Origin: Basidiobolus meristosporus CBS 931.73
Taxonomy: Eukaryota > Fungi > Basidiobolomycota
Assembly (NCBI GenBank): GCA_002104905.1
Contig: MCFE01000415.1
Span: 15,419 to 79,418 of the forward strand
Length of the DNA stretch: 64,000 nucleotides
Direction: 5' to 3'
Shown here: positions 1 through 64,000 of the stretch, one piece after another
Position numbering within the stretch: position 1 is the first letter of the stretch
How the letters are laid out: the number at the start of each line of letters is the position of its first letter
Notes under the pieces: model-generated
The model's input: the letters and a program-made list of their open reading frames with translations, nothing else
The model's database searches: none
Told to the model about the DNA's origin: nothing
Program-made: the position numbers and the translations under genes

Positions 1-725
1 TCCATTGTACTGTGCCAGGGCGCGCGGAGCAATCCGCAGTTGTTTAGAACAATCAGGCGTGATATTATAGCTACCAGAAGGCAGGATTGTTCTTGGACAA
101 TTTCGCACTATGCAGGACAATCTTGCACACTATGGCACAATGGGGTTGGCACGGATGATTGCGCCAACTTGTAATGTTTGCATCATGTGCGTGATCAGAT
201 ACCGCTATTATGGCAGGTAAAATCCGGTATTTGGATATGTTTCTTTAATGTAAATGGAAATAAATGTGTATCACACTATAAACTACACTGATACTTACCA
301 TTTTTGTTACCCTCACTCCAATTGGACAGTATCTCAGTGGTTAATTGGTCCAAAAGTATCCTGGAGCTGGCAGCCCCCAATTGGCTCATTAACTACTGAA
401 AAAGCTACCTGATTTGCCATCAAATATCTCATTTTGCCCATTGAGCAAGTAAATCCCTGATCCTAGTGATTGGACAAGGTGTCATAGCTAGCATGCAAGC
501 AATTGTGTAGGTGCAAAACAGATCCAATAGCTGCACTGGTATTACAGATGACGTATATATATGCAGGGTGTTTATTTAAAGGGGTTCTGTCTCAAATGTG
601 AGACAACCTTGATATTACTTATATCAAAAATTTGATGATCACTGATTTGCAATGGCTCGATTTGGATTGCAAAAAATAAGGGTTGTTGGGATCATTACAA
701 ATGTGAGCAATTCAAAGCAATTGCA

Positions 726-1973
726 TCATCTTCTCCTGGGTTTTTTTCTCACAGGGATTACTACTAAAGCATTTGGTAGTGACTCACTTTGCACACCTAT
801 ACTACTTCCTGGCTGACTATCATCTTGGCTACTTGTGTATTTGTAGTCAGTATTTTGCCTCCTAGTTGATGAGTGCAATGCTGCAGCTTGGCCGCGCTGA
901 ATTGCTCCAACTGAACCACCTGAACCAGCCTGTAGTGCCACATGCTGACGCGTTCTTTTACTTGCTAAGGGCTCCGGTGGTTGAGGCACTTCATGTTAGT
1001 CATCATCAGTCAGTTCACCAGAAGTAACTTGCTGATGGTCAGGCAAAACAGCATGCGCAGGCGTGCCTTGACACGTCGGGATGGCCCTTGGCTGAGTTCA
1101 ATGTGATGCTGCATGTTGACGCAACTTGGTCCGCTCCAATGGACTCATTTCTAAATGAGCAGTTTGGCGAGTTCTGGTAGTTTTGCTCTGAAGCGTGCAC
1201 GTTGACCCGACGCGCATTGACTCAATGCGGGGCGTTCTGGTAAAGGGTGTTGGCGTGGTCTGGACTGACATGCGCCGGCACGCTGTGGTTGCAAGAGATG
1301 GTAGGGAATCCAGCAAGGCATGCTGGCGCAATCTGGACAATGTTGCTTGCGGTCTGTATTCTTCCTCCTGAAGCTCACCATCTGATTCCTCAAGGTATTC
1401 ACTTACCCTCTGTTGGATACTTTGGAGCTGTTGCCTGGATGAGTCCTGTGTATTTTGCTCTTGGAAGCCACTTAGCTCTACTAATATATTGCGTAGTACA
1501 TCAGTCATTTGAGGCAAAAACTCATTCAAAATCTCTTTGGTTCCCAAAGTTGAGGCACAAACAGATGCATCCGGTCCGTACTGTGCAAATTGTGCGCAAA
1601 ATTGTTCCCGTGCGGCTTCTTTGTCAAATCCCCTCACTCTCAGCCCATTCTTGATTTCAATACTTGTCTTGTTTTATATCTTTTGACATACATTGGCTGG
1701 CATCTTGATGTAGAACTCATGCCACAGCTTTCTACTCAAATTCTTCCATCTTTGTTGACTCTCTGAGATATCTAGTTCTGTTAGATTAATCAGTAGTGCC
1801 CAAATATCTGTATGAAGGCTCATCATAGACACTTGGGCCATACTAAAATCATTTGGCAAGAACTCAAATGGATCCAACATTGACTTTTCCGGTCCGGACC
1901 GTGCTTGAGAGCTAGGGGATGGGTTTTGTCTGGGTTGTACTAAAGATGAGTTGAGACTTGGTATGGGGACCAT
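726..1973 (-). pseudogene. Accessory ORF2 (Myb/SANT-like) of Harbinger copy A, disrupted
   Basis: ORF fragments 1674-1973, 1098-1637 and 726-989 match the copy B ORF2 protein. Premature TAA at 1674 plus frameshifts. Confidence 0.8.
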
Positions 1974-2332
1974 AGCAACGGATTTGGATACTTATACAGC
2001 AGTATATTGGCATCAACCTGGTCTTATATGAAATATATATGAAAACTAATGTGATTGTTGAATTTTCCATAAATTATGCAGGATGCATCTTGGATTGCGT
2101 TGATACAGATCAGATCACATCAATTGCAGATTTCCTATTTGATTATAGACCTATGATTAAAGCATCAATAAAAGTACCAAGGCATTGTTTGCGGATGATT
2201 TTTGCAACATAATGATGGGATACATGGCAATTGATGGAGATTTAACCATAATGTATTAAAAATCAGATAAATAATGCAGATTGCACCAAATCAATTCAAA
2301 CCGCCTCCATACAATCATCCACCAATTTTAAT

Positions 2333-2854
2333 ATGAGTTACTTATTGGAATGGTCTTTTCTCATCAATTCAATCACTACCACTGTATTTCCTTTTGACGC
2401 ACTAGAGGAGATTTATTCCAAGTACTGTGGACCATCAACCCCAATCTACTCAAGGAGATCCCTTGTTAAGCTTCTCTGCTATTACAAGAACTATTGCCCT
2501 ACAAGGTTTCATTCCACCATCCATGGCAACAAATGTCCTAGAAGCTTTCATTTCCAGCTGACAGCAATGGAGAACCACCTTGCAGAGGGTATGAATGACT
2601 TAGAGCAAGCTTGGAATACTAGGTTCAGAAGCTTCAATAGACTTCCATATCCCAGAGTGTTCAGCAACAGGTTCCATATCAGGAGTATTTTGGATACCTT
2701 CCCAGTGAGGATTAACAGACCTTCTAGAGGGCAGAGGCACTTTTATTCTGGCAAGTACAAGGCACACTGTGTGAAGTTTCAAGCACTGTCTGACATTGAG
2801 GGTAACATCATCTGGTTTAGTGGGCCATTTGCTGGAAGTAGGCATGACAAAGCA
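2333..2854 (+). pseudogene. 5' part of DDE_Tnp_4-type transposase, copy A (truncated)
   Basis: LDTFPVRINRP...YSGKYKAHCVKFQALSD...GPFAGSRHDKA, then an abrupt switch to Gypsy-derived sequence. Confidence 0.85.
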
Positions 2855-4790
2855 ATCTTGTGGCCCATGAACAACAATTTTGTATACAGGAAATGGCACT
2901 TCTTTGGATGTAGTTTGAGTTGGTTCTTGAGGAGGGCTGTCAGGATATGTTGCACATCATGTATATGTTCTTCTTCATTGAGGGAATATATTGTGATGTT
3001 GTCCAGATACACAAGGGCACATTCCCATTGTAAATATCCTAGCACCTTGTCAATCATCCTTTGGAACATAGTGGGGGCATTGCACAAGCCAAAGGGTAGT
3101 TGGTTCCATTTGTATAATCCAAACAATGTTATAAAAGCGGTTTTGGGTTGATCTTCAAGGGCTACTTCTACTTGCCAATACCCGGAGATTAAGTCAAGAG
3201 AGCTAAAATATTTAGCTCCAATTAATCTGTCCAAGAGGTTGTCTATTTGCGGTAGCGGATACATGTCCTTCTGGGTGACAGCATTCAATTTTTGGTAGTC
3301 AATCCAAAAGCGTTGCTTTCCTTCTTTCTTTGGGACTATCACTACGGGGAGGCCCACAGAGACTGGCTCTCTGTAATGATGTTGTCTTTTAATAAAGTTT
3401 CAATTGTCTCTTTGATATAGTCCGTGTTAATTTTTGAGTTCCTTTAGGCTTTTTGCTTGATGGGGTATTTGTTGGCAAGGTGAATTTGGTGATGTACCCC
3501 AGGTATATGACCAATTACTTGGTTCTTAGAGAATACTTGGGCAAGCAGGCATATTCCTTCTAGGAACTTGTCTTGTAATGCAGGCAGTAGACCAGGGTCC
3601 ACATCTAAAAGTATTAGAGTTCTTTGTTTGCTTCAACACTTCTTCCCAAGGCTCATTCTGTACCTCTTCACCTAATTCCATGTTCTTTCCTTTTGACAGA
3701 GCCTCTAGTACAGGTTTCTTTGCCTCCTCTCTAAAAGCATCATGTTGACGCTTCTTCTTCCGCACTTTGACTGTTCTGACCAGAGGGCTTAAATTGACTG
3801 AGTCCTGTTGGCCTCCTGGCAAGGGACTCTGTCTTTTGATGCCTTCTTCTCTTTTGTGTCTGGTATGGGTTCTTGTCTGTACCATTTTTCACATTTGTGG
3901 GCTTGGTGGCCTACTTCTCCATATACATAACACAGGTACTGTTGTTGCAGTCATTCCATCTGTTTGGTCAGGGCTTGTACCTGGGCCTTTAAGTCTACAA
4001 CAGCTTCCCAGAGTTTATCACCTTCTTTGGGGATTTATTGGACATTGTTGATCAAGAGTTCTTGGACCTTTTGCTGTAATTCCTCTAACTCACAATCTTT
4101 TGGGGAGGCAATTTTTCCTTTCTTACAGGGGATTCCTGTCCTTCAATCATTTGTATCACTATAGGGTAGCTCCATAGCAAGATGACCCCTTTTACTTGTT
4201 TGACCAACTCTTGCAACATTTTACATCCCTGTTATTCTTTGGATGCTCTACATCATATTTTGTTGTCTAAGCCCATGATGTAATACCTCATGAGCTGTCA
4301 TTTGGCAATTTTGTCCTTTGGGAGACATCAAACTTGTTGGAGAAACAGTTCAGTGTAGGCTTCATAGCTCTCACTGCTTTGCTTTTGTGAGGACAGTAGT
4401 AGGGCTTTGTAGTGGTATCCTTTGGCATATAGAAAGCGTGTCTTGTAGGCTTCTTCTAGTGCATCCCAGTTGTCTTTAACTGCATCTTCCAACCCATAAT
4501 GCCATTGCCATGCTGACCCTTCCATATGTCTTGCAAACTCCCTTACTTTCTTATCATTGTCCCATCCTGCATCAACTGCAACTCTCAAACTTATTAAACC
4601 ACTCAAGGGCTTTCTTTCTCTTTCCCTTGTATGTTTTTAGTTTGATTGTAGTAGTCATTACCTCACTTGTGCTTATTTCTGCAGAGACAGCACCAAATAT
4701 GTGGGTTATTTCTAACTGTACTTGGTGAGTGGGAGAGCTTGTAGGTCAAGTCAGTACCACTTGGTTCAGAATAGCTTCCAATAGAAAGGA
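2855..4790 (-). mobile_element. Ty3/Gypsy LTR retrotransposon remnant (gag, degenerate zinc knuckle, RT)
   Basis: RT motifs PVVIVPKK-G--RFWIDYQKLN, YPLPQID, LPFGLCNAP, YLDN (decayed YLDD) at 2855-3357. Retrotrans_gag-like GWDNDKK...GSAWQW...WDALEEAYKTRF at 4328-4606. Confidence 0.88.
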
Positions 4791-48725: not shown

Positions 48726-49380
48726 ATCAGATTAGGGAGGGGGGGAAAGTCACCATGGTAGGTGAAATCTTTAGGGGGGGAGACAGTCACCAACAGGTGA
48801 AATCTTTATTTCAGTTGAAACAAAGAAGCCAGTGCTACTGTTGCAGCTTTGATACAAGAGTGTGTAGCTGAGGGGAACTTGTAGGTAAGTTAACAAGAAG
48901 TGATGATAGTTCTTCAGTGCTCAAGATACTGTTCAGTGGGAAGGGGGGTAGCAAGAGAGGTAAGGGTCAGGGGGGATGATAATCACCACAGGGTGAAATC
49001 TTTATTTAAATCATAAATAAAGAAGCCAAATTTGAATATGAATAATTGAGATGCAGTAAGCCTACAAGATAAACTTGGACTTTGCTGTATCCCAAATATC
49101 CTCAATACTGAAGTCTAGTGGAGAATGTAGCAAAACTGCCTGTTCACTGTAGTATTTCTTTAGGAAGTTTGTGACTTGAAGGGAAGGAGAGTTTTTCAAC
49201 AAGCTGGTAAACCTTTTGAGGAGTTCTTAGGGTGTAGGTGTTATAGTAAGGGCTAGGAAAAGGTTAGAAGAGCAGGGGGTCTGGGGGATGCAGACCCCTA
49301 GAGAATAAAAAAGCAGGGGGTTTGGGGGATGCAATCCACCATACTGCTCCCATACTCTTTAAATTCCCTTTGAATTACTT
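48726..49380 (-). mobile_element. Stack of 5'-truncated LINE 3' tails
   Basis: 48773-48963 is nearly identical to 61531-61720; three repeats of the AATAAAGAT-TCACC..GGTGA-(C)n-TAA tail motif. Confidence 0.75.
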
Positions 49381-49861
49381 TTATCTCATTCTTGGTTCTG
49401 GTCCCTTAGGGTTAGAAGTCCTCCTCCTAACCCTTATCACCCTAACCATAAATATTTTTACCCTACAATTGGCACATTGTTTGCTCATATAGTGGGCATG
49501 TCTGGGCCAATATTTGTCTCCCTATACTGTCCATATGCTCTGTATAAGTCTTGATGACTATTTAATTAATAAATTGTTACTTTTAATATATATCTAATAA
49601 TTAATGGGATTCATCCCAATCTGGCCACAATCCCATATTTTGATCAGCTTTGGGCACCATAAATTGCGCAGCCCTAATATGATAAAAATACTCATGGCCA
49701 ATACAAATTTTCAGTAACCCAATTGCTTTTACCAAATATAAAGTGTATCCCAAAGTTCAATATATATTATGGCTATAATAGAAACTTTATTTGACACCAT
49801 TGCAACTACTACTTATGTTCTATGCGCACATGTATCCTGCGGGAATTGTAAAACTTAGCCA

Positions 49862-50262
49862 TGTGGTACAAAAGTGCTTTTATTTTTCATCATGATAGTT
49901 TTATATGAGTTCCTAATGCACTTTGAAAGTACGCAGTAGCCATACCCCAACAGGTTTTAAGGATGTCCACTAGCTACATCTACTTGTGTCTAGCAGGAGC
50001 CATCTATCATCAGCTGCGCAATACTGAAATGCTTTTATTTTTCATCATGCTAGTTTTGTATGAATCCCTAACGCACTTTCATAGTGCATGGTAACCATAC
50101 CCCAACAGGTTTTAAGGATACCCACTTGCTATGTTTACTTGTGTCTAGTGGGAGTCATCAATCATCAGCCATGCGGTAATAAAGTGCTTTTATTTTTCAT
50201 TATGAGAGTTTTACATGAGTGCCTAACGCACTTTTATAGTGCGTGGTAACCATACCCCCAGA
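49862..50262. repeat. 155-bp tandem repeat, ~2.6 copies
   Basis: GCTTTTATTTTTCAT anchors at 49876, 50031 and 50186 (period 155). Confidence 0.9.
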
Positions 50263-52888
50263 AAGTAGTGTGGATGCTTACTTTAAACGCTCACTTGTGT
50301 ATTGTATGGACTATCAACAAACAGCCGCATGGGAATGAAACATCATAGAAAAGCATTGCTTTGTTGTTAGCAAGTATGGATGTGCAAATAGTGGTACTAT
50401 GTGAATTATTGAGTAACTATTTACTCTAGTTGGTTCCAAGATATTCCTAGACAATATGCTCAAAATCAATATTAGCATCAATAGCTTGCTCTTTGATCAC
50501 CAAACCACCGCACCCAATATGCAGTGGCCTTGGTTTTGTCTAGCTGTTGAGGAATGAAACCAGAGTACAGTCACAAGAGTGGCAAAAGTGAAATGTGATG
50601 AAGTAAGTGTATATGAAAGTAATATAAATCTACAGGACAGAAGAGAACAACTAGTAGTTAAACAGCACTCACTGACACTCCACCAAGTAGAGCACCAACA
50701 TGGACAATAAACAAGTCATGAGCGGAAAGCTTAAGGACTGCTACTTGGGGATCAAGACCAAAAGAGGAAGCTGCCTCTACCATAGCAGTCCTTGTGCTCC
50801 AAAGGAAGACCAAGAGTATACTATAGACAAAGATTGCAGCAAGAAGAGCAGTACAATTACCAGTTCTGGTAGTGGTACCTTTGGAAGTCCCAAATACCTG
50901 GAGAAAACTTGGAAAAAATTGGCAGATGACTCAGTTGTCCTGAAGAGAAAACAAACCAATGTGATTGAGCAGTTCCAAAACAAACTTCAGCTTAGTTCTT
51001 CTTTGCCTCACTATAAAGTACTCCAAGTGGCTTATTTGGATTATAAGCGTATGAAGGAGAATCAGGCAGAGACTAATAAATTAAGTGATAGTCAATTGCA
51101 TCATTTCTTAGATCAGGTAGAGAAACAGTAGCACAGCCAAGAGATGGAACAAGAATTGACAATTGCAGAAACCAAATAATTTTGCCAATGTAGTTTTGCA
51201 TTCTAATAAAATAAAAGGGTGCTAATAAGAACAGAATAAAGTTAACTTATGTGTACATCAAATGATTCAAATACTGGCTAGAAGGAAGTTATGTAGGAGC
51301 AAGAAGCTCAGTAACCTCAAAGGAAAGATTTGATGAATGGGCCACCCATCATCCAAATGAGTATAAAAGTGGAGAAAGTAGACATAATCCTTCATAAAAA
51401 ACAAGAAGCATGGAAGCAGACAGTAGCCAGGTAGATGCCAGGAGTGAAGGTAGAGTACAAAGAGAGCAAGGAAAGGGACAAGGATGTGGAACCGGGTGCA
51501 GAAGAGGAAGAGGGCAAGGAAGTGGCCAAATCCAAGTGGAGCATGAAGGAGTTGTTGCAGCAAACGTGAATGATGCTGAGCAAGTTGCTGTAGTCACTAC
51601 CAGGCGGCCGGTCAACCAAGTTTCCCAAGCATTGTCAGAGGTTTGACAAGAGCTTCCAGAATATAGGACAACATCTCACCATGAGATATTGCGACGTATG
51701 TGCCAGGAGATTAAACAGAGGAGGGGTGATATTGTAAAGCTAAATTGGGATATTGCTGGACTTCAAGCCCAGATTGATTTCAGTTTCCACCATTCTACTG
51801 AGGCATTAGTGGCACAAATGGTGGAAAAGTTTGCCTGCATCAGGGCAAGCAATGAGCAAGATGCATCTTCCAACCCAGGTGTACTTGCAAGCAACAGTAT
51901 TGGAGGGGATACTACTTCCTCCCTTGGACCTACCACAAGCCAAGAGACAAGAGCAGAATCCTCCACAACAATGAGAATGGCCCCCACACAGGTTGATGTG
52001 GAAGTGTGCAAAGAAGACGTGGAGAAGCAGAGTGGGGATACTATAGGCCAACCAGAAACTGTAATGGAGGCGGAGAGACCAAGTCATATTGTCATCTTAA
52101 AAATATCACAGGTTGATTCACTGCTATCACTTCCCCCACCATCACTAGACTTGTTCCATCGTACCGTGCCAGGGCGTGCGGCGCGATCCGCGGTTGCAAA
52201 GAACAATTGGGCGCAATATTATAGCTACCAGAAGGCAGGATCATTCTTGGACAATTTCGCACTATGCGGGACGATCTTGCACACTATGGCACAATCTGAC
52301 ACGATGAGGTTGGCGCGGATGATTGCGCCAACTCGTAATGCTTGCATCACGTGCGCGATCGGATACCGCTATAATAGCAGGTAAAATCCGGTATTTGGAT
52401 ATGTTTCTTTAATGTAAATGGAAATAAATGTGTATCACACTACAAACTACACTGATACTTACCATTTTGGTTACCCTCACTCCAATTGGACGGTATCTCA
52501 GTGGTTAATTGGTCCAAAAGTATCCTGAAGCTGGCAGCCCCCAATTGGCTCATTGACTACTGAAAAAGCTACCTGATTTTCCATCAAATATCCCATTTTG
52601 CCCATTGAGCAAGTAAATCCCTGATCCTAGTGATTGGGCAAGGTGTCATAGCTAGTACGCAAGCAATCGTGTAGGTGCGAAACAGATCCAATAGCTGCAC
52701 TGGTATTACAGATGACGTATATATATGCAGGGTGTTTATTTATAGGGGTTCTGTCTCAAATGTGAGATGACCTTGATATTACTTATATCAAAAATTTGAT
52801 GATCACTGATTTGCGATGGCTCGATTTGGATCGCAAAAAAAAGGGTTGTTGGGATCATTACGAATGTGAGCGATTCAAAGCGATTGCA

Positions 52889-54160
52889 TCATCTTCTCCT
52901 GGGTTTTTTTCTCACAGGGATTACTACTGAAGCATTTGGTAGTGACTCACTTTGCACACCTATACTACTTCCTGGCTGACTATCATCTTGGCTACTTGTG
53001 TATTTGTAGTCAGTATTTTGCCTCCTAGTTGATGAGTGCGATGCTGCAGCTTGGCTGCGCTGAATTGCTCCAACTGAACCAACTGGACCAACTGAACCGG
53101 CCTGTAGTGCCACGCGCTGACGCGTTCTTTTACTTGCCAAGGGCTCCGGTGGTTGAGTCACTTCATGTTGGTCATCATCAGTCAGTTCACCAGAAGTAAC
53201 TTGCTGATGGTCAGGCAAAACGGCACGCGCAGGCGCGCCTTGACGCGTTGAGATGGCCCTTGGCTGAGTTTGATGTGATGCTGCATGTTGACGCGACTTG
53301 GTCCGCTCCAATGGACTTGTGTCTAAATGAGCAGTTTGGCGAGTTCTGGTAGTTTTGCTCTGAAGCGCGCACGTTGACCCGATGCGCGTTGACTCAATGC
53401 GCGTTGACTCAACGCGGGGCGTTCTGGTAAAGGGTGTTGGCGTGGTCTGGACTGACGTGCGCCGGCGCGCTGTGGTTGCAAGAGATGGTAGGGAATCCAG
53501 CAAGGCGTGCTGGCGCAATCTGGACGATGTTGCTTGCGGTCTGTATTCTTCCTCCTGAAGCTCACCATCTGATTCCTCAAGGTATTCACCTACCCTCTGT
53601 CTGATACTTTGGAGCTGTTGCCTGGATGAGTCCTGTGTATATTGCTCTTGGAAGCCACTTAGCTCTACTAATATATCACGTAGTACATTAGTCATTTGAG
53701 GCAAAAACTCATTCAAAATCTCTTTGGTTCCCAAAGTTGAGGCACAAACAGACGCGTCCGGCCCGTACTGTGCAAATTGCGCGCAAAATCGTTCCCGCGC
53801 AGCTTCCATGTCAAATCCCCTCACTCTCAGCTCATTCTTGATTTCAATACTTGTCTTGTTATATATCTTTTTACATACATTGGCTGGCATCTTGATGTAG
53901 AACTCATGCCACAGCTTTCTACTTAAATTCTTCCATCTTTGTCAACTCTCTGAGGTATCTAGTTCTGCTAGATTAATCAGTAGTGCCCAAATATCTGTAT
54001 GAAGGCTCATCATAGACACTTGGGCCATACTAAAATCATTTGGCGAGAACTTGAACGGATCCGACATTGACTTTTCCGGTCCGGACCGCGCTTGTGAGCT
54101 AGGGGATGGGTTTTGTCTGGGTTGTACTAAAGATGAGTTGAGGCTTGGTATGGGGACCAT
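52889..54160 (-). pseudogene. Harbinger ORF2 (Myb/SANT-like W...RWKNL segment plus disordered tail); one premature TGA at 53942-53944
   Basis: 53942-54160 and 52889-53890 are in one frame, separated by TGA where copy A has CAA. Confidence 0.75.
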
Positions 54161-54519
54161 AGCAACGGATTTGGATACTTATACAGCAGTATATTGGCAT
54201 CAACCTGGTCTTATATGAAATATATATGAAAACTAAAGTGATTGTTGAATTTTCCATATATTATGCATGATGCATCTTGGATTGCGTTGACACGGATCAG
54301 ATCACATCAATTGCAGATTTCCTATTTGATTATAGACCTATGATTAAAGCATCAATAAAAGTACCAAGGCATTGTTTGCGGATGATTTTTGCAACATAAT
54401 GATGGGATACATGGCAATTGATGGAGATTTAACCATAATGTGTTAAAAATCAGATAAATAACGCAGATCGCGCCGAAACGATTCAAACCGCCTCCATACA
54501 ATCATCCATCAATTTTAAT

Positions 54520-55404
54520 ATGACTTACTCATCTGAATGGTCTTTTCTCATCAATCCCATCACTACCACTGGATTTCCTTTTGACACACTGGAGGAGATC
54601 TATTCCAAGTACTGTGGACCATCAACCCCAATCTACTCAAGGATATCCCTTGTTAAGCTTCTCTGCTATTACAAGAACTATTGCCCTACAAGGTTTCATC
54701 CCACCATCCATGGCAACAAAAGTCCTAGAAGCTTTCATTCCCAGCTGACAGCAATGGAGAACCACCTTGCAGAAGGTATGAATGACTTAGAGCAAGCTTG
54801 GAATACTAGGTTCAGAAGCTCCAATAGACTTCCATATCCCAGAGTGTTCAGCAACAGGTTCCATATCAGGAGTATTTTGGATACCTTCCCAGTGAGAATT
54901 AACAGACCTTCTAGAGGGCAGAGGCACTTTTATTCTGGCAAGTACAAGGCACACTGTGTGAAGTTTCAAGCACTGTCTGACATTGAGGGTAACATCATCT
55001 GGTTTAGTGGGCCATTTGCTGGAAGTAGGCATGACAAAGCACTCTGGGTAGAGAATCATCCTGAATTCAGTAGAGGGGAGAAATGTATGGCAGACTTGGC
55101 CTATATAGGAGAGGATGGTCAGAGATTAGGATGTATTACAGCTTATAGGAAGCCAAGGAATGGTGTGCTTAGCAGGAAGCAGAAGCTCTACAATGAGATA
55201 TTTAATCATCTCAGAGTAAGGGTAGAGCACACATTTGGATATCTGAAGAGATTCAGCATATTGGCAGGTAAATACAGAGGAAAGTCATATATAGGAGAAA
55301 ACAGCAGAATAGGTAAAATAGTTAAGATACTTATCAGTGCACAGTATGTTCATACAAGAAGACATCCACTGAGAGAAATGTGTCTGGAGCATTATGAAGA
55401 GTAA
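54520..55404 (+). CDS. DDE_Tnp_4-family transposase (294 aa), catalytic D-D-E apparently intact
   Basis: LDTFP, YSGKYKAHCVKFQ, GSRHD, MADLAYIG, YNEIFNHLRVRVEHTFGYLKRFSIL. Confidence 0.92.
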   Translation: MTYSSEWSFLINPITTTGFPFDTLEEIYSKYCGPSTPIYSRISLVKLLCYYKNYCPTRFHPTIHGNKSPRSFHSQLTAMENHLAEGMNDLEQAWNTRFRSSNRLPYPRVFSNRFHIRSILDTFPVRINRPSRGQRHFYSGKYKAHCVKFQALSDIEGNIIWFSGPFAGSRHDKALWVENHPEFSRGEKCMADLAYIGEDGQRLGCITAYRKPRNGVLSRKQKLYNEIFNHLRVRVEHTFGYLKRFSILAGKYRGKSYIGENSRIGKIVKILISAQYVHTRRHPLREMCLEHYEE

Positions 55405-55799
55405 ATAAAGCAAGGAAAGCACTATTCTGAGCAACATAAGTAAGATTGAGTAAAATTACCAGTAACTGTATCATACCACTGGCATCATGGTAGAAATTAT
55501 AGTGCCAGATAGTGCCGTAGAGTGCCAGATCAATCCGGCACTATAAACCGGCTGGCACTATGTGGCACTATCCAACGGAACAAGTCTACTATCTGTGCCC
55601 CCATCACCACCGCCATCCTCTGGCTAACTTGAGTAAATAAAGAGTTTCCACCATCCCAAATCAATGAATTGACAAGTGATAAGTTGAACTGATAATATTG
55701 ACAATTTACAGACTAATATATGTAAAGTATGTAGTACTTAAGAGCTTTCAAGTTGTGGTGTATTATCAAGTATTCACTGTCACATAAATCACACAGCAG

Positions 55800-58636
55800 T
55801 TGTTGTATCACTTTCCCAATGGCATTAGAAGCCAGCAGTCACAAGGAGCATTGGAAAATTTTGGCGTTTACCTGGCAACGGTGGCAGGTGTAACAAAACG
55901 CAGCTATTGCTTGATGACCATTACCCCATCTATGAGATACTTGCTATTATATGGAGGGTATTCTGTTGAGCACTTTCAAGACAGCAAAATATCCCCGCCT
56001 TATGATGAGCGTAGAGCTGAAGAAACATCCAGCTGTGGAATAATCTATGAGCCCAGCTCAAAGGTTCAAATGATTCACCTTGCAGATCTACATGGTGATG
56101 AAGACATCACAGTGACAGTCCTCCCAACTCCGGACAACATATCAACTACAGAGGCAGCCAAAGGGGTGATTTTAATTGGCAACAGCTGTGCTGGTGACCA
56201 TGAGAATCTCTACATATATGGTGGTTCTGAGCTGAGAATACTCAGGGCAACATGAAAGTGCAAAAAAACGGGGGAAAAAGCAATACAAAGCAAGAGTGGG
56301 GAGACAATTTATAGCAGACTGAGCAAGCTGGAGGTAATCATGTACAAAGATGGCAATGGATGCTCCAGAGTATTGGAGACAAGGCCATTCTTGAATAATC
56401 TGGCAAATATGCCTTCAGCAAGAGGTTGGGCAGTTCTTATGTATGCATTTGATTGCTTATTCTTGCTGGGCGGCTATCCTACACCATTGGAACCACCTTA
56501 TACTCAACCAAATGGGAGTTTTTTAAACAAGTTCTACTGTTTAAAATTGCAAACTGGTGATTGGGAAGCACAACATGTACACTCAGCAATACAGGAGCTT
56601 GGAGAAAACTTTATTGCTGTGGTAAATGAGTATGGCAACCAAATCCAATACATCAACAATGCAAATGTTACATATACCTATGATGTTAATAATCAGATCT
56701 GGATTTACCCTCCCAATCCAAGTCAGTAAGAAATGAGTACAAAGCAGCTACTAGGGCGCATTCTTAATGAATTGGCAGCAATCTCTCAGCGGCACAAGAG
56801 GGAAGGCAAAGGAAGTGCTGAGACTGAAAATATCTTGCAGCATAGTGCCCATGGTCTTACTGTCCCACTTAAGAACCATCAAGCATTTGGCGTACAATGA
56901 CTGATGTATACACAGGCCATCCATAAAGGAGCATTGCTTGCCAATTCCATGGGACTTGGGAAGACATTGCAGATATTAAGTCTCATATTGGAGACACCTG
57001 AGCAAAGGCCAAATCTTATTGTTATCACGCTTGGAATACTTCTCAATTGGGTAATGAAGATAAAGACAAAAACAAGGATATCCAATGAAGAGCTTCATGT
57101 ATTTCATTGAAAATTCCAAGCTATCAAGAAGTCAGATATGGAGACTAAGAGGATTGTGCTCACCACCTACCACACACTATGTGTTGAAGCAAGGAACCCT
57201 GATTCACCTATATGGAGTGTGAAATTTGGCCAAATAGTGGCCAATGAGGCAGATACACTTAAGAACTACAAAGGTGGTAGCTTAAACTCAGTGAGCAAAA
57301 TTGATGGAGAATCCTTGATACTTGTCACTGCCACCCCATTCCAAAATGAGATTATGGATCTTTAATCATTATCACATTATTCAAGCTATGGGAAGGCATT
57401 CCAAAGGATTTCCATCAACTCCTACTTGAGGAGGCCAATGCAAACAGGCTAGTTGAATGGGTTGCAGAAAGACTTGGCCCATTAACATTGAGACGCGTTC
57501 CAGAGTTGCAAATATTTGGAGAATGTGCAGTATCCATGCCTAGTATTCAAGAGCAGATTGTCTTGTGCTAATTCTTGCCGGAGGAGCTGCAGGAGTACAA
57601 ACAACTGGAGTCAAGTCTTCCAGAGGAAGTTGGTTGGATGGGTGCAAATACCTATCTGCATCTGTACCCATGACATCCATATATGTATACCTGGAGCAGG
57701 AAGAGGAATTGACTGAAAAAAGTGGCTGATGCTAGCATTGTCCAAGATGTTGAGATGAGTGAGGATGATTTTCTACCTGAGATTGATGAGGATCTTGAGG
57801 CGGTTGTGGCTGAGGTTGAGGAGCAGCTTCAAGAGATTAATAGCAAAGAGGTTGACAGCTCATCCAACGTTCCATCTACTTCTGCACCAACTGCCATACG
57901 CACCAAAGATGCCCCTACAATTGCCCAAAGTGGGCTTGCATTAGAGGACTCCAACAGGGTATTTATCCAAGATTTCCTCACTGGTGTAACCAACAACACT
58001 GTGAACAAGCATAGTGGCAAAACTCAGAAAATCATGGAAATCCTGCTTGAAATCCAAGAAAATAAGGAGCACACACGTGTTATTATTTTTTCTGGGTTTA
58101 ATCTGATGCTTGACATAGTGGCTTACCATTTGAGGGAGCAGAGCATTGGACATCTGAAGATTACCAGTTCCACCCCAGTTTGGATACAAATGAGCAGTAT
58201 AGATACATTTGCATTGCCAGTTCCGGAGGGCAAGATTTGTGTGTTACTGATCAACATCAAGTGTTGCGCATTTGGATTAAATTTGCAGATGGCATCAGCA
58301 GTGATCATTGCCAACAATTGGTGGAATCCCTATGTAGAAATCCAAGCAAAGGCCAGAGTTTGGAGGGTGAATCAACCAAATAATGTTTCTAGTTACCAGT
58401 TAGTTATGCAAGATTCCATTGAAGCTCAGGGTGTAATTGACAGTCAAGCTTGTAAGATTGGCTTATTTGGCCAGATTGCGCATACATTGGTAGATGAAGC
58501 ATCCAAAGTACCAATTTTGTTACAACTTCAAGAGCAAGATGATCAGTACTTGAGCCAATTACATGAAGCGCAAGGGGGTGGATCTCTGATGCACAAAGAT
58601 GAAGAGGAGGTTGACAAGACAACAGATGAGGAGTAA
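55800..58636 (+). pseudogene. Intronless Kelch-repeat + SNF2-family ATPase fusion gene, decayed
   Basis: Kelch-like LLLYGG, LYIYGG, LFLLGG. SNF2 LKNHQAFGV, LLANSMGLGKT, IVLTTY, VANEAD, VTATP-QN, VIIFS, GLNL--AS-VI---WWNP--E-QA--RV-R. 56340-57365 is one frame with point stops. Confidence 0.82.
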
Positions 58637-58871
58637 ATAGGGGTTGCAATGCACCAGGAATCAAGTATGCCAGACTTGAGGTAGTAGTAGCTACTATTGG
58701 TAAATAAACAATGAGACTAATCTTTTTGTACAAGAAGGGTGGGAGAGGGAGAAGGAGAGGGAGAGAGAAAAGTCAGAGTGGTACGGTCTAAATAAAAAAG
58801 GGTGCAAGAGTTTTATGGTGATGAAGATAAACATGCATTTGGTGCTGTGTGGTGGTGTTTGGATCCATTGG

Positions 58872-60125
58872 TCACAAATGAAAGTGCAATACTAGAATAT
58901 AGTGATGAGAATCACCATATGTTGGTGCTGCGCGGTGCCAATTTGGTATTGAGATTCATCAGGCACATATGAGAGTGCAATACTAGAATATGGTGATGAG
59001 AATAACCATAGGTTTGGTGCTGCGCGGTGTGGTAGGGTAAACATACCTCCCACAGACAAGTTTATTCATATAGTCATTATGATATACTTATCCATATTTT
59101 ATCTTATCAGTATTATCCCATTCTTCTTTTGCCCATATTATCAGTATTATCCCCATGTGATGTTTACCCTGATTAGTTATTAGCATTAGTTATCCCAGAT
59201 GTTATTCAGCTTTGTGATCAGTAGATGTATCTATATAAGGCAAGTACCCGCGTCAGTACCCATGACACATGACCTAGGTCTGTGTTACCATCCCTACCAT
59301 TTCAATACCATATATGGTATCCATATGTTACACAGGTTTCAGAATACTGATTCCTGATTGGTTGAGAGTGCTGTGCCTTTTAGAACCTTCCAGGACATTC
59401 TTGGCATATTCTTAGCTCATAGTGATGTCATCAAGAATTCCACTGATACCTAGAATCTTCTAGAACCTTGTCATTAGTAATCACTTGGCAATCAGGAAAA
59501 GTATTTAAGGGAAAACAATCCCTCATCAATAAATCATCCCTTCTATCAGTTACACTTCTACCTTATTGATTAGCAGTTGATCACTGCACCTGCCTTCAAC
59601 AGTACATCTCAGACCTGCCATCAAGGAGCTTTTCAAGGTAGTGCACAAGACACACAGAGGCCTTTGGAGACACTTGGAGCACCTAGGAAGCTAGAGAAGC
59701 AGCAGCTTATACCATAGAGACATACTGACAAAGACACCAGCAGTTTAGATCCAGAGGTTATTGCACCCATCAGACACCTCACACACCTTGAGTTGTGTAG
59801 CTTCTCCCAGGAGTACCTCTACACCACCACAGCGGTGCCAATTTAGTATTGAGATTCATCAGGCACAAATGAGAGTGCAATACTAGAATATGGTGATGAG
59901 AATAACCATAGGTTTGGTGCCGTGCGGTGCCAATTTGGTATTGAGATTCATCAGGCACAAATGACAGTGCAATACTAGAATATGGTGATGAGAATAACCA
60001 TAGGTTTGGTGCCGTGCGGTGCCAATTTGGTATTGAGATTCATCAGGCACAAATGAGAGTGCAGTACTAGAATATGATGATGAGAATAACCATAGGTTTG
60101 GTGCCACGCGGTGCCAATTTGGCTT
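58872..60125. repeat. 92-bp tandem repeat array (~5 copies) split by a solo LTR
   Basis: GTGCCAATTT anchors at 59835, 59927, 60019 and 60111; ~1.7 further copies at 58872-59027. Confidence 0.92.
59028..59831 (+). mobile_element. Solo LTR (804 bp) with 4-bp TSD GCGG
   Basis: TGTGGT...ACCACA inverted ends; GCGG at 59024-27 and 59832-35; internal TATA-like and AATAAA motifs. Confidence 0.85.
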
Positions 60126-60854
60126 TAAGATTCATCAATATGCAGTAATGAATGATTTGATATGTGCCTTTGTTGGATGGATGACATGCGTTAGTTGGTA
60201 CTAAAATAGTCTACTCCAACAAAAACCACATTGTATTCCTCTGTGTCTGTTTCATGGGGTTCAGTAAATCACCCAGGGCTATATAAAAATGAAGACCTCT
60301 TCTGTCAGGTATTCAGACACAGACGCAAGAGTTAGTGAAGTACTGGAATCTTATACACAATTGTAAGCAATGGACTTTCAGTTAGGCAAGAAGTCTTACT
60401 TAAGGTAAGTTGTGCTTTGAAGATTCTAGAAAGGACTTGAGCATCTTGGTTGCTGCTATTAGCATTCAAGTAAGAACTGATTTGGTGGCAATTGTGTGCT
60501 TAGGGTTAAGGTAAGTGATGAGGAATGCCTTGTGCAGAGTTCATTTTTAAAGTACTATGTGAATGGGTTTGAAACAAGGTAGATGTGAGATGTTTTTAGA
60601 GAGAGAAAAAATAAAGTAAACAGTAATTCAAAGAACTTTTATTTTTTGAAATGCTCATAGGGACACATAATCTCCCGTAGATTATTTTGACCAAATCTTC
60701 TTCAGTATCCTTTACCAAGTTTATATCCTAGCTTGTTGACCACACCTTTGTTCATCAGATGTGTCAATATCATATGATTGTTGCTTCTTTGAAACTGTTA
60801 GGGGGCTAGGGGAACTTCCCCTTAGGATAAATTGTTGGCTTCCTTGGTTTGGAG

Positions 60855-61530
60855 TTAGGGTTAGGGGAGGGAAAGTCACCAAGTTGTTGAGATCTTTATT
60901 TGAGTTAAGAACTAATCTAAGTACAAATAAAGAAGCCAATTAAGAGGTCTAGAACCTCTCTAATAAGTAATCTAATTTATGTTTTGTTTCATCTCTAATG
61001 TTTGTTTCAATAAAGTAGAGCATATAAAATTCAGGGGTTTTGGGGGAAGTACAAATTGTAGATGTTTCTGATCAATATAATCCAAGACTGGAACCCAGCC
61101 TGGGATTAGGTGTAGTAGGAAAGGTGTGTGGACTTGTAAGTAGCTCTGCCACATAGATCTTAGATGGTCCTGAGCCAGTAGTCTTGGTTTCTCTGCTTTT
61201 TGAAGTTTTGAAGCAAGCTCTGTTACTACAGCAGAGCCAACCAGGGTGTGCCAGCAAGAAGATTTCAGGGAGGTGCTAGATTTAAGCCATTTTTGATGGA
61301 GGGGTTATGTGATTTCTGAAGTTTGACTAGGAAGGAAGCACGGAGATAGATCATTTGGATTTGGTATGGGTACAACCCAAAGGCTCCATTAGTTGCATGG
61401 ATATAGGGAGATACTGGAAGATAAGGTACCAAGGATCTGATACACTGATGGACAAATTTATCCAGGCGGTCAAGTTTGCTGGAGGTTAGGGGTATAATGT
61501 GGAGACCAAATTCAAGTACCGGCAGTACAT
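60855..61530 (-). mobile_element. Second, diverged, 5'-truncated LINE copy (3' end only)
   Basis: Encodes YVLPVLEFGL..DKFV.., paralogous to FVFPVLEFGL..DKFA in the main LINE; ends in the same tail motif. Confidence 0.75.
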
Positions 61531-64000
61531 ACTTAGGGGGAGACAGTCACCAACAGGTGAAATCTTTATTTCAGTTGAAACAAAGAAGCCAGCGCTACTG
61601 TTGAGCTTTGATACAAGAGTGTGTAGCTGAGTGGAATTTGTAGCTAAGTTAATAAGAAGTGATGATAGTTCTTCAGTGCTCAAGACACTGTTCAGTGGGA
61701 AGGGGGGTAGCAAGAGAGGTAAGAATGACTTGTGAACAACATTAATGAGGGGAATGTGATAAGGATTGATATTCATCATAAAGGGAGTGTGCTGCTGCAG
61801 ATATTGCTGCAAAAGGTCTGTCAAGTACTTCAGGTAGGCCAGCTTGGGTTTTTCTGACTTCAGAATAAATTCAGCAAACTTCTTGACTTCAGGATCTCCA
61901 AGTATAGCTCTCCAGCAGGAGCCAGGTGTTGTGTGGTGTGTTCTCTTCCAGGCCTTAATCAGTGGATTGTTGCAGTTGTGAAGTCTGAGGTATAATCTGG
62001 TTCTAAGGTAGAGAAGTCTGATCTTATAGGGCATAAACCCAAAAGCACCAAGAATGCATGTCTGTAGGGGCATTCAGGCAAATGAGGCACCAAGGAGGTA
62101 ATGCACCATACTGCAAACTTGTCAAGCTTAGTGCAGTCTCTAGAAGTAAGAGAGAGAAGTGGTAAGCCAAATTCCAGGACAGGGAAGACAAACTGCTTGA
62201 GTAGAAGCAGGCAGCTGGGAGCTGAAGTTGTAGGAGGAGTAACAGCCAGTAGCTTGTGGAGTGCCTGTCTTGCCAGGATGATTCTCTTCTTCAGGTGTGC
62301 TCCAGAGTCTAGTCCAGTAGGAAGGAAAGGAAAGCCAAGATATGTAGCAGAAACCTGAGCAGGTAGAGTGGAGTTCTCCAAGTTGATGGGAGAGCCCAAA
62401 GGTACTGTCTTTGCAATGGAAAGCTGGAGATTATTCTTCTGCAGATACTGGTGGATGGTCTGGGAGTCTTGTTGCACATTGGAGGAGGATATTCTGATGT
62501 CATCAGCAAAGAGAGTAACCAGGCAGTCAGCTGAGAGTCTTGGGAAATCATTCAGGAAGATGGCAAACAGTATAGGACCAAGCACAGAGCCTTGGACCAC
62601 TCCATTAGGAACTGAGAACACAGCTGATTGCTCACTTGGGTGCAGAATTCTTGCTTGTGGATCCAGAAACAGAGACCTGACAAGGAGGGTGAGAGAGGTA
62701 CTGGAGAAGCATTGCAACTTGGACCAAAGCAGATTTCTGTCAACTGAATCAAAGGCCTTAGTAATATCAAACAGAACAGAGGGATACTTGCACTGGAGAG
62801 AGTGATCTTGGCTAAGTATGACTGCATATTCCAAGGAGAGGCCAGGAACAAAGCCAAACTGTGCAGGATGAAACTTGAGGGAGTCAGAGTAGAGCTCCTG
62901 AGCAAGCAGAAGCTCAAACACCTTTCTGCAGGTGGGCAGCAGAGATATTGGCCTGTAGGAGCTAGGATCCAGGTGCTTTCCTTTACCCTTGTACAGTGGC
63001 AGAACATTGGCAAAGGACCATTCCTCAGGAGTAGAAAGCTGGGCTGAGCATTGCTGAAACAGTGGAAGCAGAAGTGCAGACATGGCCTTGGTACTAGTCT
63101 TCAGAAGCTCATAGGAGATTGTGTCCACACCTGGAGCAGTAGAGTTGGGAAGCCTCTTGAGCACATTATGGATTCTCCCTTGATTAAGTGCAAGTGGGAT
63201 GGGCAGAGTCTTGAAGTCAGGATGAAAGCCAGGAGTTGAGTACTGCTTTGTAGAGAAGAAGATGTTAGCCAGCTGTTCTGTTGAAGGTAACTTCCTGGAA
63301 GAGGGCCTCATTGCCCTGTAGAGTCTTGATACTGTTCTTGTTATAGAGTTGGAAGATTGCAGAGGCAAGGAACTCATAATATGATCCCAGAGCTGAGTAT
63401 GCACAGTGTGGTGAATTGCCTTGGAGTGGTGTATGGCTGTCAGGAGGAGTTTCTCTGTTTTTGGGTTAGGGAAACTCAGGTAGCTTTGTTGCAGGGCTGA
63501 AACAATGGATTTCCATTTTCTTGAGGTAACAGCAGTAGTTGTGCATGGCAGTGAGAGGGAGGCAGACACCAGAATCAGATGCTTCACAAAGAGCCAGGCA
63601 TAGTTGAGATCATCTGGCAGAGAAAGTAGCACACTGGCAAGCTTCAAGTAGTTCCCAAAGTCTTTCTTCTGATTCTTGGTAGCTTTGTGGGTGAGCACAG
63701 TAAGTTTTGGCAGCTTCTTCTTCACAACTGGTTGCATAGAAAGGGACCAGGCTGGGTGGTCAGAGGCTCTCAAAGATCCTAGCTCAGCTCCAGAGAATTG
63801 CTTAACTTCATTCACAAAGTAGAGGGCAGCAGCAGAAGGGCAGATCCAGTCAACACATCTTTTCTCAGATTGAGCACCTAGTGCTAGCAGGTGGCTTTCT
63901 CTCAGGAAGTTCAGTAGGAATGTAGACCTTGGCTTCATTCTTGCAGTCAGAGTAGTCTTGTTCTCAGGATGGGGAATGTTGAGATCTCCAAGCAAGATAA
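61531..64000 (-). mobile_element. Non-LTR retrotransposon (LINE, APE + RT); 5' end beyond the window
   Basis: 678-codon ORF with GDLN and SDH (APE), APGVD, YRPISLL, QFGF, FDITKAFDSV, QGSVLGPILF, FADD, YLG. One frameshift at ~62065 into the 61486-62073 frame. Confidence 0.95.

What the first reader, a model, noticed from the sequence alone, without database searches (positions are those of the whole stretch)
55800..58636. Kelch-repeat + SNF2 ATPase fusion, intronless, in repeat chromatin
Seen: the third Kelch-like block (56340) runs in frame through point stops into the SNF2 Q motif (LTVPLKNHQAFGVQ*L), Walker A (LLANSMGLGKT), motif II (VANEAD) and on to a helicase-C domain. One frameshift (~56235) links the earlier Kelch blocks. 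Both D->N losses are GCC GAT->GCC AAT, i.e. CpG decay. I know of no standard fungal SNF2 subfamily with N-terminal Kelch repeats. Inference: a TE-borne chromatin remodeller, potentially an anti-silencing factor, later killed by the silencing system.
Basis: partly seen in the sequence, partly recalled or inferred. Interest (0 to 1): 0.75.

Follow-up and report, generated by a model that had tools for sequence, protein, structure and literature searches.

The report
Dead SNF2 gene in chromosome-end repeat
This is a broken copy of a gene found so far only in the fungus Basidiobolus, a SNF2-type DNA motor with an unusual, probably Kelch-like front domain. It sits in a repeated block flanked by telomere units, much like the helicase-bearing blocks at yeast and mould chromosome ends, but with a different kind of motor.

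Summary
Window 55819-58636 (+) is one intronless 942-codon frame. It runs from an N-terminal region with GG-doublet repeats into a SNF2 N-lobe and a Helicase_C lobe.

The fusion is real. Three gene models from other copies in Basidiobolus meristosporus CBS 931.73 read from the N-terminal region into the SNF2 lobe without a break.

"Kelch" is likely but unproven. Only sub-threshold Pfam hits support it, solved structures give nothing, and two AlphaFold runs failed.

The carrier does not look like a transposon. The block (about 49406-60867) lies between two short TTAGGG seeds, inside an array of telomere-attached LINE 3' ends next to ordinary genes. The only transposase is a Harbinger that inserted later.

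Both D->N motif changes occur in every sampled copy that covers them. None of the four stops I could trace is a CpG transition, so "killed by silencing" is at best partly right.

The same scan already found this family on other DNA of this genome and read it as a chromosome-end repeat; my window agrees. New here:
- a lesion map of this copy;
- a second subfamily and a B. ranarum relative;
- weak placement beside Rad5/16-like SNF2s;
- no Kelch among the nearest relatives.

The parts
55819..58636 (+). Pseudogene of a 942-codon intronless gene: Kelch-like N-terminal region fused to a SNF2 ATPase
   Evidence: Family proteins align collinearly at 87-94% identity (tblastn and MAFFT). Pfam places the domains.
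55819..56726 (+). N-terminal region of about 305 aa with GG-doublet blocks (YLLLYGGY, LYIYGGS in this copy / LYIYGGF in other copies, LFLLGGY) and a fourth block without GG; putative Kelch-type repeats
   Evidence: Only sub-threshold Kelch-clan Pfam hits. ESM Atlas neighbours are all Kelch or RAG2 at 0.76-0.79. No PDB hit. AlphaFold pLDDT 32 and 29.
56856..57368 (+). SNF2 N-lobe: Q motif, Walker A (56934-56966, LLANSMGLGKT), motif II (57237-57254, VANEAD instead of DExH), motif III (TATPFQN)
   Evidence: Pfam SNF2-rel_dom on two pieces. P0153 aligns to SsoRad54 at E 3e-16.
58022..58369 (+). SNF2 C-lobe (Helicase_C), with ANNWWNP at 58310-58330 and QAKARVWRVNQ
   Evidence: Pfam Helicase_C E 6e-14. 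PDB hits to Chd1, Fft3 and Sth1 at 1e-16 to 1e-13.
55855..55858 (+). Frameshift 1: one A missing from an A-run
   Evidence: the frame switches between P0003 residues 13 and 14.
56235..56279 (+). Frameshifts 2 and 3: 8 bases missing at about 56235, one A missing from the run 56275-79. The ancestral frame between them reads EYSGQHESAKKRGK.
57363..57373 (+). Stop (Tyr to TAA at 57363) and frameshift 4 (one base missing plus substitutions at 57369-73)
56727..57712 (+). Span holding the other in-frame stops: 56727 TAA (was Glu), 56898 TGA (was Trp), 57108 TGA (was Gly), 57569 TAA, 57671 TGA, 57710 TGA
49406..60867 (+). Repeat block carrying the gene. Left edge: TTAGGGTTAG at 49406-49415. Right edge: TTAGGGTTAGGGG at 60855-60867. 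The right edge could lie at the weaker seed at 60500.
49430..49451 (+). Telomere-like units in the opposite orientation (CCCTAA-type), just inside the left edge; a head-to-head arrangement with the seed
50700..51131 (+). Upstream orphan ORF A (143 aa)
   Evidence: no family match.
51398..55627 (+). Upstream orphan ORF B, in two parts (51398-52146 and 55591-55627), split by the Harbinger. One internal stop at 51644.
   Evidence: The frame rejoins when the Harbinger is removed. No family match.
52147..55587 (+). Nested PIF/Harbinger transposon with 26-nt TIRs, flanked by ACT on both sides. A second copy, 94% identical, lies at window 1-2858.
58814..60137 (.). 92-bp tandem array downstream of the gene, interrupted by an 802-bp insert (59030-59831) that starts TG and ends CA and is flanked by GCGGTG on both sides; probably a solo LTR
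49871..50258 (.). 155-bp tandem array in the left part of the block
48732..49405 (-). Three stacked, 5'-truncated LINE 3' ends. The first two each follow TTAGGG plus a G-run (48732, 48771); the third (48964) follows a G-run only.
   Evidence: Positions 48776-48964 are 96% identical to the 3' end of the LINE at 61536.
60868..64000 (-). Two more telomere-attached LINE 3' ends (60868 and 61539). The second carries an open reverse-transcriptase frame.

Best explanation
This is a dead copy of a SNF2-family gene known so far only from Basidiobolus. The gene has a probable Kelch-like N-terminal domain. It rides as passive cargo in a multi-copy chromosome-end repeat block.

Shown in this window: ordinary genes stop at about 47 kb. 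To their right lies a stack of sequences, most of them (four of five LINE tails and the block itself) joined to a short TTAGGG seed. The stack is LINE 3' ends, then the block of about 7 kb (11.4 kb with two later insertions), then more LINE 3' ends. All seeds have the G-strand pointing right, as expected if the chromosome end is on that side.

Inferred: the block spread between chromosome ends by recombination or break-induced copying primed from telomere repeats, as yeast Y' and fungal TLH regions do. Spread would not have needed the protein. Two observations fit this: every sampled copy already has Asn in place of the acidic residues in motif I (LANS) and motif II (NEAD instead of DExH), and no annotated copy is whole.

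This copy then decayed, apparently without constraint. It gained 4 indels, 7 stops and a mixed substitution spectrum in which CpG sites are hypermutable.
For: - Domains and lesions.
- Fusion seen in other copies: P0166, P0153, P0167.
- Copy number: copies at 90% identity or more on at least 12 contigs of B. meristosporus. All are fragments; the longest model is 526 aa.
- Telomere seeds at both block edges, and five LINE 3' tails, four of them joined directly to TTAGGG.
- From 47 kb onward, 13 of 16 TTAGGG hexamers are on the + strand.
- Ordinary genes lie at 8-47 kb.
- CpG o/e is 0.18 in the gene and mostly 0.7-1.0 in the genic part.
- The Harbinger is secondary.
- Motif changes shared among copies.
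- Known parallels: TLH-containing regions and telomeric retrotransposons at Fusarium chromosome ends (PMC12857005; 10.1101/2024.02.27.582403).
Against: - The block limits, the sameness of the junctions and the terminal position of the other copies therefore rest on this window plus unchecked earlier notes.
- The window's contig is 79,418 bp, so the gene may be 5 to 21 kb from the contig end. No long terminal telomere array is in view.
- A second subfamily at 53-66% identity and a B. ranarum relative show that the family is old. That is easier to explain if the protein was useful at some time.
- Recombinational spread is inferred, not shown.
Confidence: 0.68

Rival explanations
1. The gene is cargo of an autonomous mobile element, for example a tyrosine-recombinase element of which this window holds a shortened three-ORF version. 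That element, not recombination between chromosome ends, spread the copies.
For: Earlier notes of this scan report longer versions of the block that carry a tyrosine recombinase (unchecked). The gene is intronless and multi-copy.
Against: Between 49406 and 60867 no recombinase, transposase or reverse transcriptase appears apart from the nested Harbinger. The block has no TIRs, LTRs or target-site duplication; its edges are telomere seeds. No close relative turned up in the pattern-based scans of viral or metagenome contigs, which detect close relatives only.
Confidence: 0.12
2. The block was attached to chromosome ends through an RNA copy made by the telomere-specific LINE machinery. This would resemble the LINE tails beside it and the rare retro-copying of yeast Y' elements.
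For: The block's left edge follows a telomere seed just as four of the five LINE 3' ends do. The gene has no introns.
Against: The block's left 450 bases show no similarity to any of the three LINE 3' ends beyond chance (z from -0.2 to 0.6 against shuffles). The apparent MAFFT match was forced. If the left edge were an RNA 3' end, the genes would be antisense to that RNA. The block also keeps tandem arrays and intergenic DNA.
Confidence: 0.1
3. The family is, or recently was, a working gene whose product acts at chromosome ends. It could be a SNF2-type counterpart of Y'-Help1 or TLH helicases, or an ATPase-dead adaptor. This window simply holds one dead copy.
For: The family has persisted. There are two subfamilies in B. 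meristosporus and a relative in B. ranarum, together forming a 100%-supported clade. The C-lobe motifs are well kept (WWNP, both motif VI arginines).
Against: No whole model exists among the annotated proteins. NEAD replaces DExH in all copies that cover motif II. Motif VI is itself hit in the second subfamily (R to C) and in B. ranarum (R to W).
Confidence: 0.15
4. This is a processed or segmentally duplicated pseudogene of an ordinary single-copy host SNF2 gene.
For: It is intronless and decayed.
Against: No intact parent appears in the protein collections; every B. meristosporus model is a fragment of this same family. The nearest other protein is only about 35% identical. There is no poly(A) tail, and the same flanking ORFs and arrays travel with the gene according to earlier notes.
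Confidence: 0.03

Closest known systems
Yeast Y' elements and fungal telomere-linked helicase (TLH) regions, often beside telomere-specific retrotransposons (MoTeR, FoTeR)
   Same: A multi-copy block at or near chromosome ends carries one large helicase-superfamily gene. Short telomere-repeat tracts bound it. It sits among telomere-attached non-LTR elements, and many copies are decayed (PMC12857005; 10.1101/2024.02.27.582403; PMC1635262).
   Different: The motor here is SNF2-family, not RecQ (TLH) or the Y'-Help1 type. It has a Kelch-like N-terminal region and no TLH or C2H2 motifs. Motif II is NEAD. The host is a zoopagomycete, not a member of the Dikarya.
Rad5/16-like grouping of SNF2 ATPases (Rad5, Rad16, Uls1, Lodestar)
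   Same: The WWNP signature before motif VI is present. In a quick C-lobe tree the family falls on the DExH side, with RING-bearing proteins and a Boothiomyces protein whose best solved match is Rad5.
   Different: No RING or HIRAN domain. The stem branch is very long (2.9 changes per site) and support is only 89% SH-aLRT. For the family itself, PDB ranking puts Chd1, Fft3 and SsoRad54 ahead of Rad5.
Bacterial and archaeal SNF2 proteins (SsoRad54; SNF2_assoc- or SWIM-bearing proteins with a DEAQ box)
   Same: They are the best N-lobe match among solved structures (1z63, E 3e-16), make up many of the top hits, and share the WWNP signature.
   Different: The tree separates the family from the DExQ group. 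Identity is about 30%. None has the N-terminal region.
Kelch beta-propellers (Kelch_1-6, KLHDC2-type, RAG2)
   Same: GG-doublet blocks with the expected hydrophobic pattern. Every non-SNF2 Pfam hit is a Kelch-type family. The ESM Atlas neighbours are Kelch or RAG2. UniRef names two copies 'Galactose oxidase'.
   Different: No hit reaches a curated cut-off. Only 3 or 4 blades can be recognised where a propeller needs 6 or 7. There is no hit to solved structures and no confident fold.

Membership tests
SNF2 family ATPase | SNF2-related N-lobe above Pfam gathering score | tested here: met
   34.7 and 36.6 bits on two window pieces and 47.9 bits on P0166, against a cut-off of 24.9.
SNF2 family ATPase | Helicase_C lobe with motifs IV-VI | tested here: met
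   52.7 bits against a cut-off of 23.5. QAKARVWRVNQ keeps both arginines.
SNF2 family ATPase | Catalytic motif II DExH/Q and the acidic pair before Walker A | tested here: not met
   NEAD and LANS are found in the window and in all sampled copies that cover them. The nearest relatives have DEAH or DEAQ and LADDMGLGKT/LADEMGLGKT.
SNF2 family ATPase | Open reading frame | tested here: not met
   4 frameshifts and 7 stops in this copy.
Kelch beta-propeller | A Kelch-family profile match above its curated cut-off | tested here: not met
   Best scores are 20.8 bits against 50 (PF24681) and 18.4 against 22 (Kelch_3). A profile search of PDB found nothing.
Kelch beta-propeller | Six or seven repeated blades | tested here: inconclusive
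   Four candidate blades. hhalign gives E 1e-3 for blade A against B and 0.03 for A against C; the other pairs show nothing.
Kelch beta-propeller | Propeller fold | tested here: inconclusive
   AlphaFold2 mean pLDDT was 32 (single sequence) and 29 (11 near-identical rows). I ran no fold search on such models.
Rad5/16-like SNF2 | RING (and HIRAN) inserted between the lobes | tested here: not met
   Pfam finds no RING or HIRAN in the pieces between the lobes. The insert is acidic and Ser-rich.
Rad5/16-like SNF2 | Groups with Rad5/16-like proteins in a tree | tested here: inconclusive
   It falls on the DExH side at 89% SH-aLRT, but on a very long stem in a quick tree of 226 columns.
Telomere-linked helicase (TLH) / Y' element | RecQ-type (TLH) or Y'-Help1-type helicase | tested here: not met
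   The protein is SNF2-family.
Telomere-linked helicase (TLH) / Y' element | Multi-copy block bounded by telomere repeats at chromosome ends | tested here: inconclusive
   The window shows seeds at both edges and a telomeric LINE array, and copies lie on at least 12 contigs.
Autonomous transposable element carrying cargo | Own transposase, RT or recombinase plus TIR, LTR or TSD at the block edges | tested here: not met
   Only the nested Harbinger has these, and it splits ORF B.

The most novel reading that the evidence does not exclude
The block is a self-propagating chromosome-end element of early-diverging fungi. Its signature gene is a SNF2-type translocase with a propeller-like front domain, a functional counterpart of Y'-Help1 or RecQ-type TLH helicases. 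Working copies in some strain or species would help telomerase-independent end maintenance or open subtelomeric chromatin. The head-to-head telomere units at the left edge and the direct units at the right edge also leave open that the unit once existed as a linear piece capped at both ends.
Probability: 0.15. Interest if true: 0.75.

Novelty: new variant of a known kind. Interest (0 to 1): 0.45.

Why it matters
Helicase genes tied to chromosome ends are known from yeasts and several moulds, and all are RecQ-like or Y'-type. A SNF2-family gene in the same setting, in a distant fungal lineage, would show that different DNA motors have been recruited to the same niche more than once. It would also give a second system for asking whether such genes serve the chromosome end or only ride along.

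This window adds a clear fossil record of stepwise additions to a chromosome end, and a domain pairing (Kelch-like region plus SNF2) not seen among the nearest relatives. This particular copy is dead, and the family may never be caught working, which limits the interest.

Tried and rejected
Block limits, junction sameness and dN/dS therefore went untested.
- The search of earlier findings by sequence returned nothing. The operators warn that this means nothing.
- AlphaFold2 on P0003 alone and on an 11-row alignment headed by P0166 gave pLDDT 32 and 29. I ran no fold search on those models.
- PDB sequence and profile searches with the N-terminal region found no Kelch protein.
- The word search with the 157-aa N-terminal piece found only this family.
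- Pattern-based scans of metagenome and viral contigs found no close relatives; these scans detect close relatives only.
- I tested whether the block's left end is a diverged LINE 3' tail. MAFFT suggested a match, but local alignment scores equal those of shuffles, so I rejected the idea.
- Orphan ORFs A and B gave no family or Atlas match.
- I did not submit the gene read through its stops to any tool. Pieces were searched separately, and my in-script reading used X at each break.
Full report
**Identity of the genome.** The C-terminal piece of the frame is 93% identical to a hypothetical protein of Basidiobolus meristosporus CBS 931.73 (P0001). The N-terminal piece is 92% identical to another (P0003). 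Two proteins that the window itself encodes are recorded on a contig of 79,418 bp, so the window covers most of that contig.

**The observation.** A six-frame reading and Pfam scans of the pieces between stops confirm a SNF2 N-lobe in two pieces (E 1.3e-8 and 3.5e-9) and a Helicase_C lobe (E 6e-14), in order on the + strand. I aligned nine family proteins to the window. They give the following map:
- Start codon at 55819, stop codon at 58634-36.
- Four frameshifts: -1 at 55855-58, -8 at about 56235, -1 at 56275-79, and -1 with substitutions at 57369-73.
- Seven in-frame stops.

The missing bases add up to 11, which restores exactly 942 codons. The TGA at 56253 is out of the ancestral frame.

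**The fusion is real.** P0166 (436 aa), P0153 (526 aa) and P0167 (417 aa) are gene models from other copies. They read from the N-terminal region straight into the Q motif and Walker A, and P0153 and P0167 continue into motifs II and III. The window's frame is collinear with them, so no intron is needed. The one gap in P0153 (ten residues after LKLQT) is present and open in P0166 and in the window; it looks like a modelling detour around a lesion.

**Kelch.** All non-SNF2 Pfam hits on the N-terminal 305 aa are Kelch-type families, but none reaches its cut-off. The best is 20.8 bits against 50, E 2.6e-4. Other evidence:
- The ESM Atlas feature search lists only Kelch and RAG2 clusters, at 0.76-0.79. 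The tool itself calls scores in that range a lead only.
- UniRef names two copies 'Galactose oxidase'.
- Single-sequence and profile searches of solved structures find no Kelch protein.
- Blade-to-blade profile comparison is weak.
- Both AlphaFold runs failed, because every available homologue is at least 88% identical.

I put the Kelch reading at about 60%.

**Which SNF2.** Against solved structures the C-lobe is closest to Chd1, Fft3, Sth1 and ERCC6 (1e-16 to 1e-13; Rad5 scores 2e-9). The N-lobe is closest to SsoRad54, SRCAP and Fft3.

A full HMMER search of 1.84 billion representatives with the C-lobe found only four proteins at E 1e-30 or better. Three are from B. meristosporus and one is from B. 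ranarum. The next hit is a Boothiomyces (chytrid) protein at 35% identity, whose own best solved match is Rad5.

The family has at least two subfamilies in B. meristosporus: the main one, and P0005/P0009 at 53-66% identity to it. There is also a B. ranarum member at 54-66%.

Of the 46 nearest full-length relatives, 17 carry the bacterial SNF2_assoc domain, 8 carry SWIM, about 5 carry RING and 1 carries HIRAN. None carries Kelch. None of the 120 listed word-search hits carries Kelch either.

A quick tree of the C-lobe gives a 100%-supported Basidiobolus clade on a very long stem. It sits on the DExH side, with the RING-bearing proteins and Boothiomyces, at 89% SH-aLRT, and apart from the DExQ bacterial-type group. 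The WWNP signature fits either grouping. I treat the family as an unplaced, RING-less offshoot nearest the Rad5/16-like proteins.

**State of the motifs.** LLANSMGLGKT and VANEAD (both Asn codons are GCC AAT) are present in every sampled copy that covers them. The nearest relatives have LADEMGLGKT or LADDMGLGKT and DEAH or DEAQ. These changes therefore predate the recent burst of copies. From general knowledge of SF2 enzymes, Asn in place of the first Asp of motif II should abolish ATP hydrolysis; I did not test this here. ANNWWNP is shared only with P0001; P0004, P0005 and P0006 keep DNWWNP.

**How it decayed.** CpG observed/expected is 0.18 in the gene and about 0.2 in the rest of the block. 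It is 0.0 in the Harbinger transposase and the LINE. In the genic 8-47 kb it is mostly 0.7-1.0 (range 0.49-1.0).

Of 28 amino-acid changes private to this copy that need one traceable base change, 8 are CpG transitions, 10 are other transitions and 10 are transversions. The four stops with a known ancestor are not CpG transitions. The two Harbinger copies show the same bias: 50 sites are CpG in one copy and TpG or CpA in the other.

CpG decay is therefore real in this compartment, but it did not deliver the killing lesions.

**Surroundings.**
- Positions 8-47 kb hold ordinary genes: amino-acid permease, chitin deacetylase, pirin, bestrophin, a phosphorylase, HMG-box and C2-domain proteins.
- From 48.7 kb the + strand shows TTAGGG followed by a G-run and a conserved tail, the reverse complement of a LINE 3' end, at 48732, 48771, 60855 and 61533. 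A fifth tail at 48964 follows a G-run only.
- One fragment is 96% identical to the 3' end of the LINE that carries an open RT frame at 61.5-64 kb.
- From 47 kb on, 13 of 16 TTAGGG hexamers are on the + strand (a one-sided binomial gives about 0.01 by my arithmetic).

This is what repeated additions to a chromosome end lying to the right would leave.

**The block.** It starts after TTAGGGTTAG at 49406 and ends before TTAGGGTTAGGGG at 60855; a weaker seed at 60500 could be the true right limit. In order it holds:
- a 155-bp array;
- two orphan ORFs;
- the gene;
- a 92-bp array.

Two later insertions interrupt it. The first is a Harbinger with 26-nt TIRs and ACT on both flanks, which cuts ORF B; the ORF B frame rejoins when the Harbinger is removed. 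The second is an 802-bp TG...CA insert flanked by GCGGTG, probably a solo LTR. I found no recombinase in this copy.

**Comparison with what is known.** The arrangement matches yeast Y' elements and fungal TLH-containing regions, which lie beside telomere-specific retrotransposons (PMC12857005; 10.1101/2024.02.27.582403; PMC1635262). The motor family and the N-terminal domain differ. Full-text searches found no paper on Basidiobolus chromosome ends and none on a subtelomeric SNF2 gene with Kelch repeats.

**Earlier notes of this scan.** Other windows of the same genome had already been read as a chromosome-end repeat carrying a dead 942-codon Kelch-SNF2 gene. Those notes turned me from a transposon reading to the end-repeat reading. 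I then tested that reading within this window (seeds, LINE tails, gene boundary), and it held. The claims about other copies remain unchecked by me.

**Limits.** Every statement about the DNA of other copies therefore rests on protein models and on earlier notes.

Noticed in passing
window 49406-49451: Head-to-head telomere-like units. TTAGGGTTAG is followed 12 bases later by two CCCTAA-type units on the same strand. With the direct units at 60855, the block has the end layout of a linear molecule capped at both ends, or of an old end-to-end joining.
   Followed up: partly
window 48732-49405, 60855-61600: Five LINE 3' ends from at least three related families share a tail (G-run, TCACCA, GAAATCTTTATTT). 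Four of the five are joined directly to TTAGGG; the fifth, at 48964, follows a G-run only. These are telomere-primed non-LTR elements like MoTeR and FoTeR, here in a zoopagomycete.
   Followed up: partly
window 52147-55587 and 1-2858: Two Harbinger copies are 94% identical. At 50 sites the copy at 52 kb keeps CpG where the copy at window 1-2858 has TpG or CpA, against 6 sites the other way. The transposase ORF at 54520-55404 has no CpG at all, while ORF2 (52889-53890, minus strand) has CpG o/e 0.8.
   Followed up: partly
window 59030-59831: An 802-bp insert that starts TG and ends CA, flanked by GCGGTG on both sides, lies inside the 92-bp tandem array. It is probably a solo LTR.
   Followed up: partly
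window 55497-55575: Three AGTGCC motifs are followed by three GGCACT motifs just inside the right TIR of the Harbinger. They are probably transposase-binding subterminal repeats, not part of the SNF2 gene's promoter.
   Followed up: no
window 50700-52146: Two orphan ORFs lie upstream of the gene (143 aa, and about 250 aa with one stop). Neither has a family, Atlas or structure match. They appear to travel with the gene as a three-ORF unit.
   Followed up: partly
P0007 (Boothiomyces sp. JEL0866, 1833 aa): The nearest non-Basidiobolus relative is a gene model with two complete SNF2 units in tandem. This is either a fused model of two neighbouring paralogues or a true double ATPase.
   Followed up: no
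window 60340-60520: Several GTAAGT-type donor-like sites and a TTAGGGTTAAGG unit lie in the stretch between the 92-bp array and the right seed. The block's true right limit may be at 60500.
   Followed up: no
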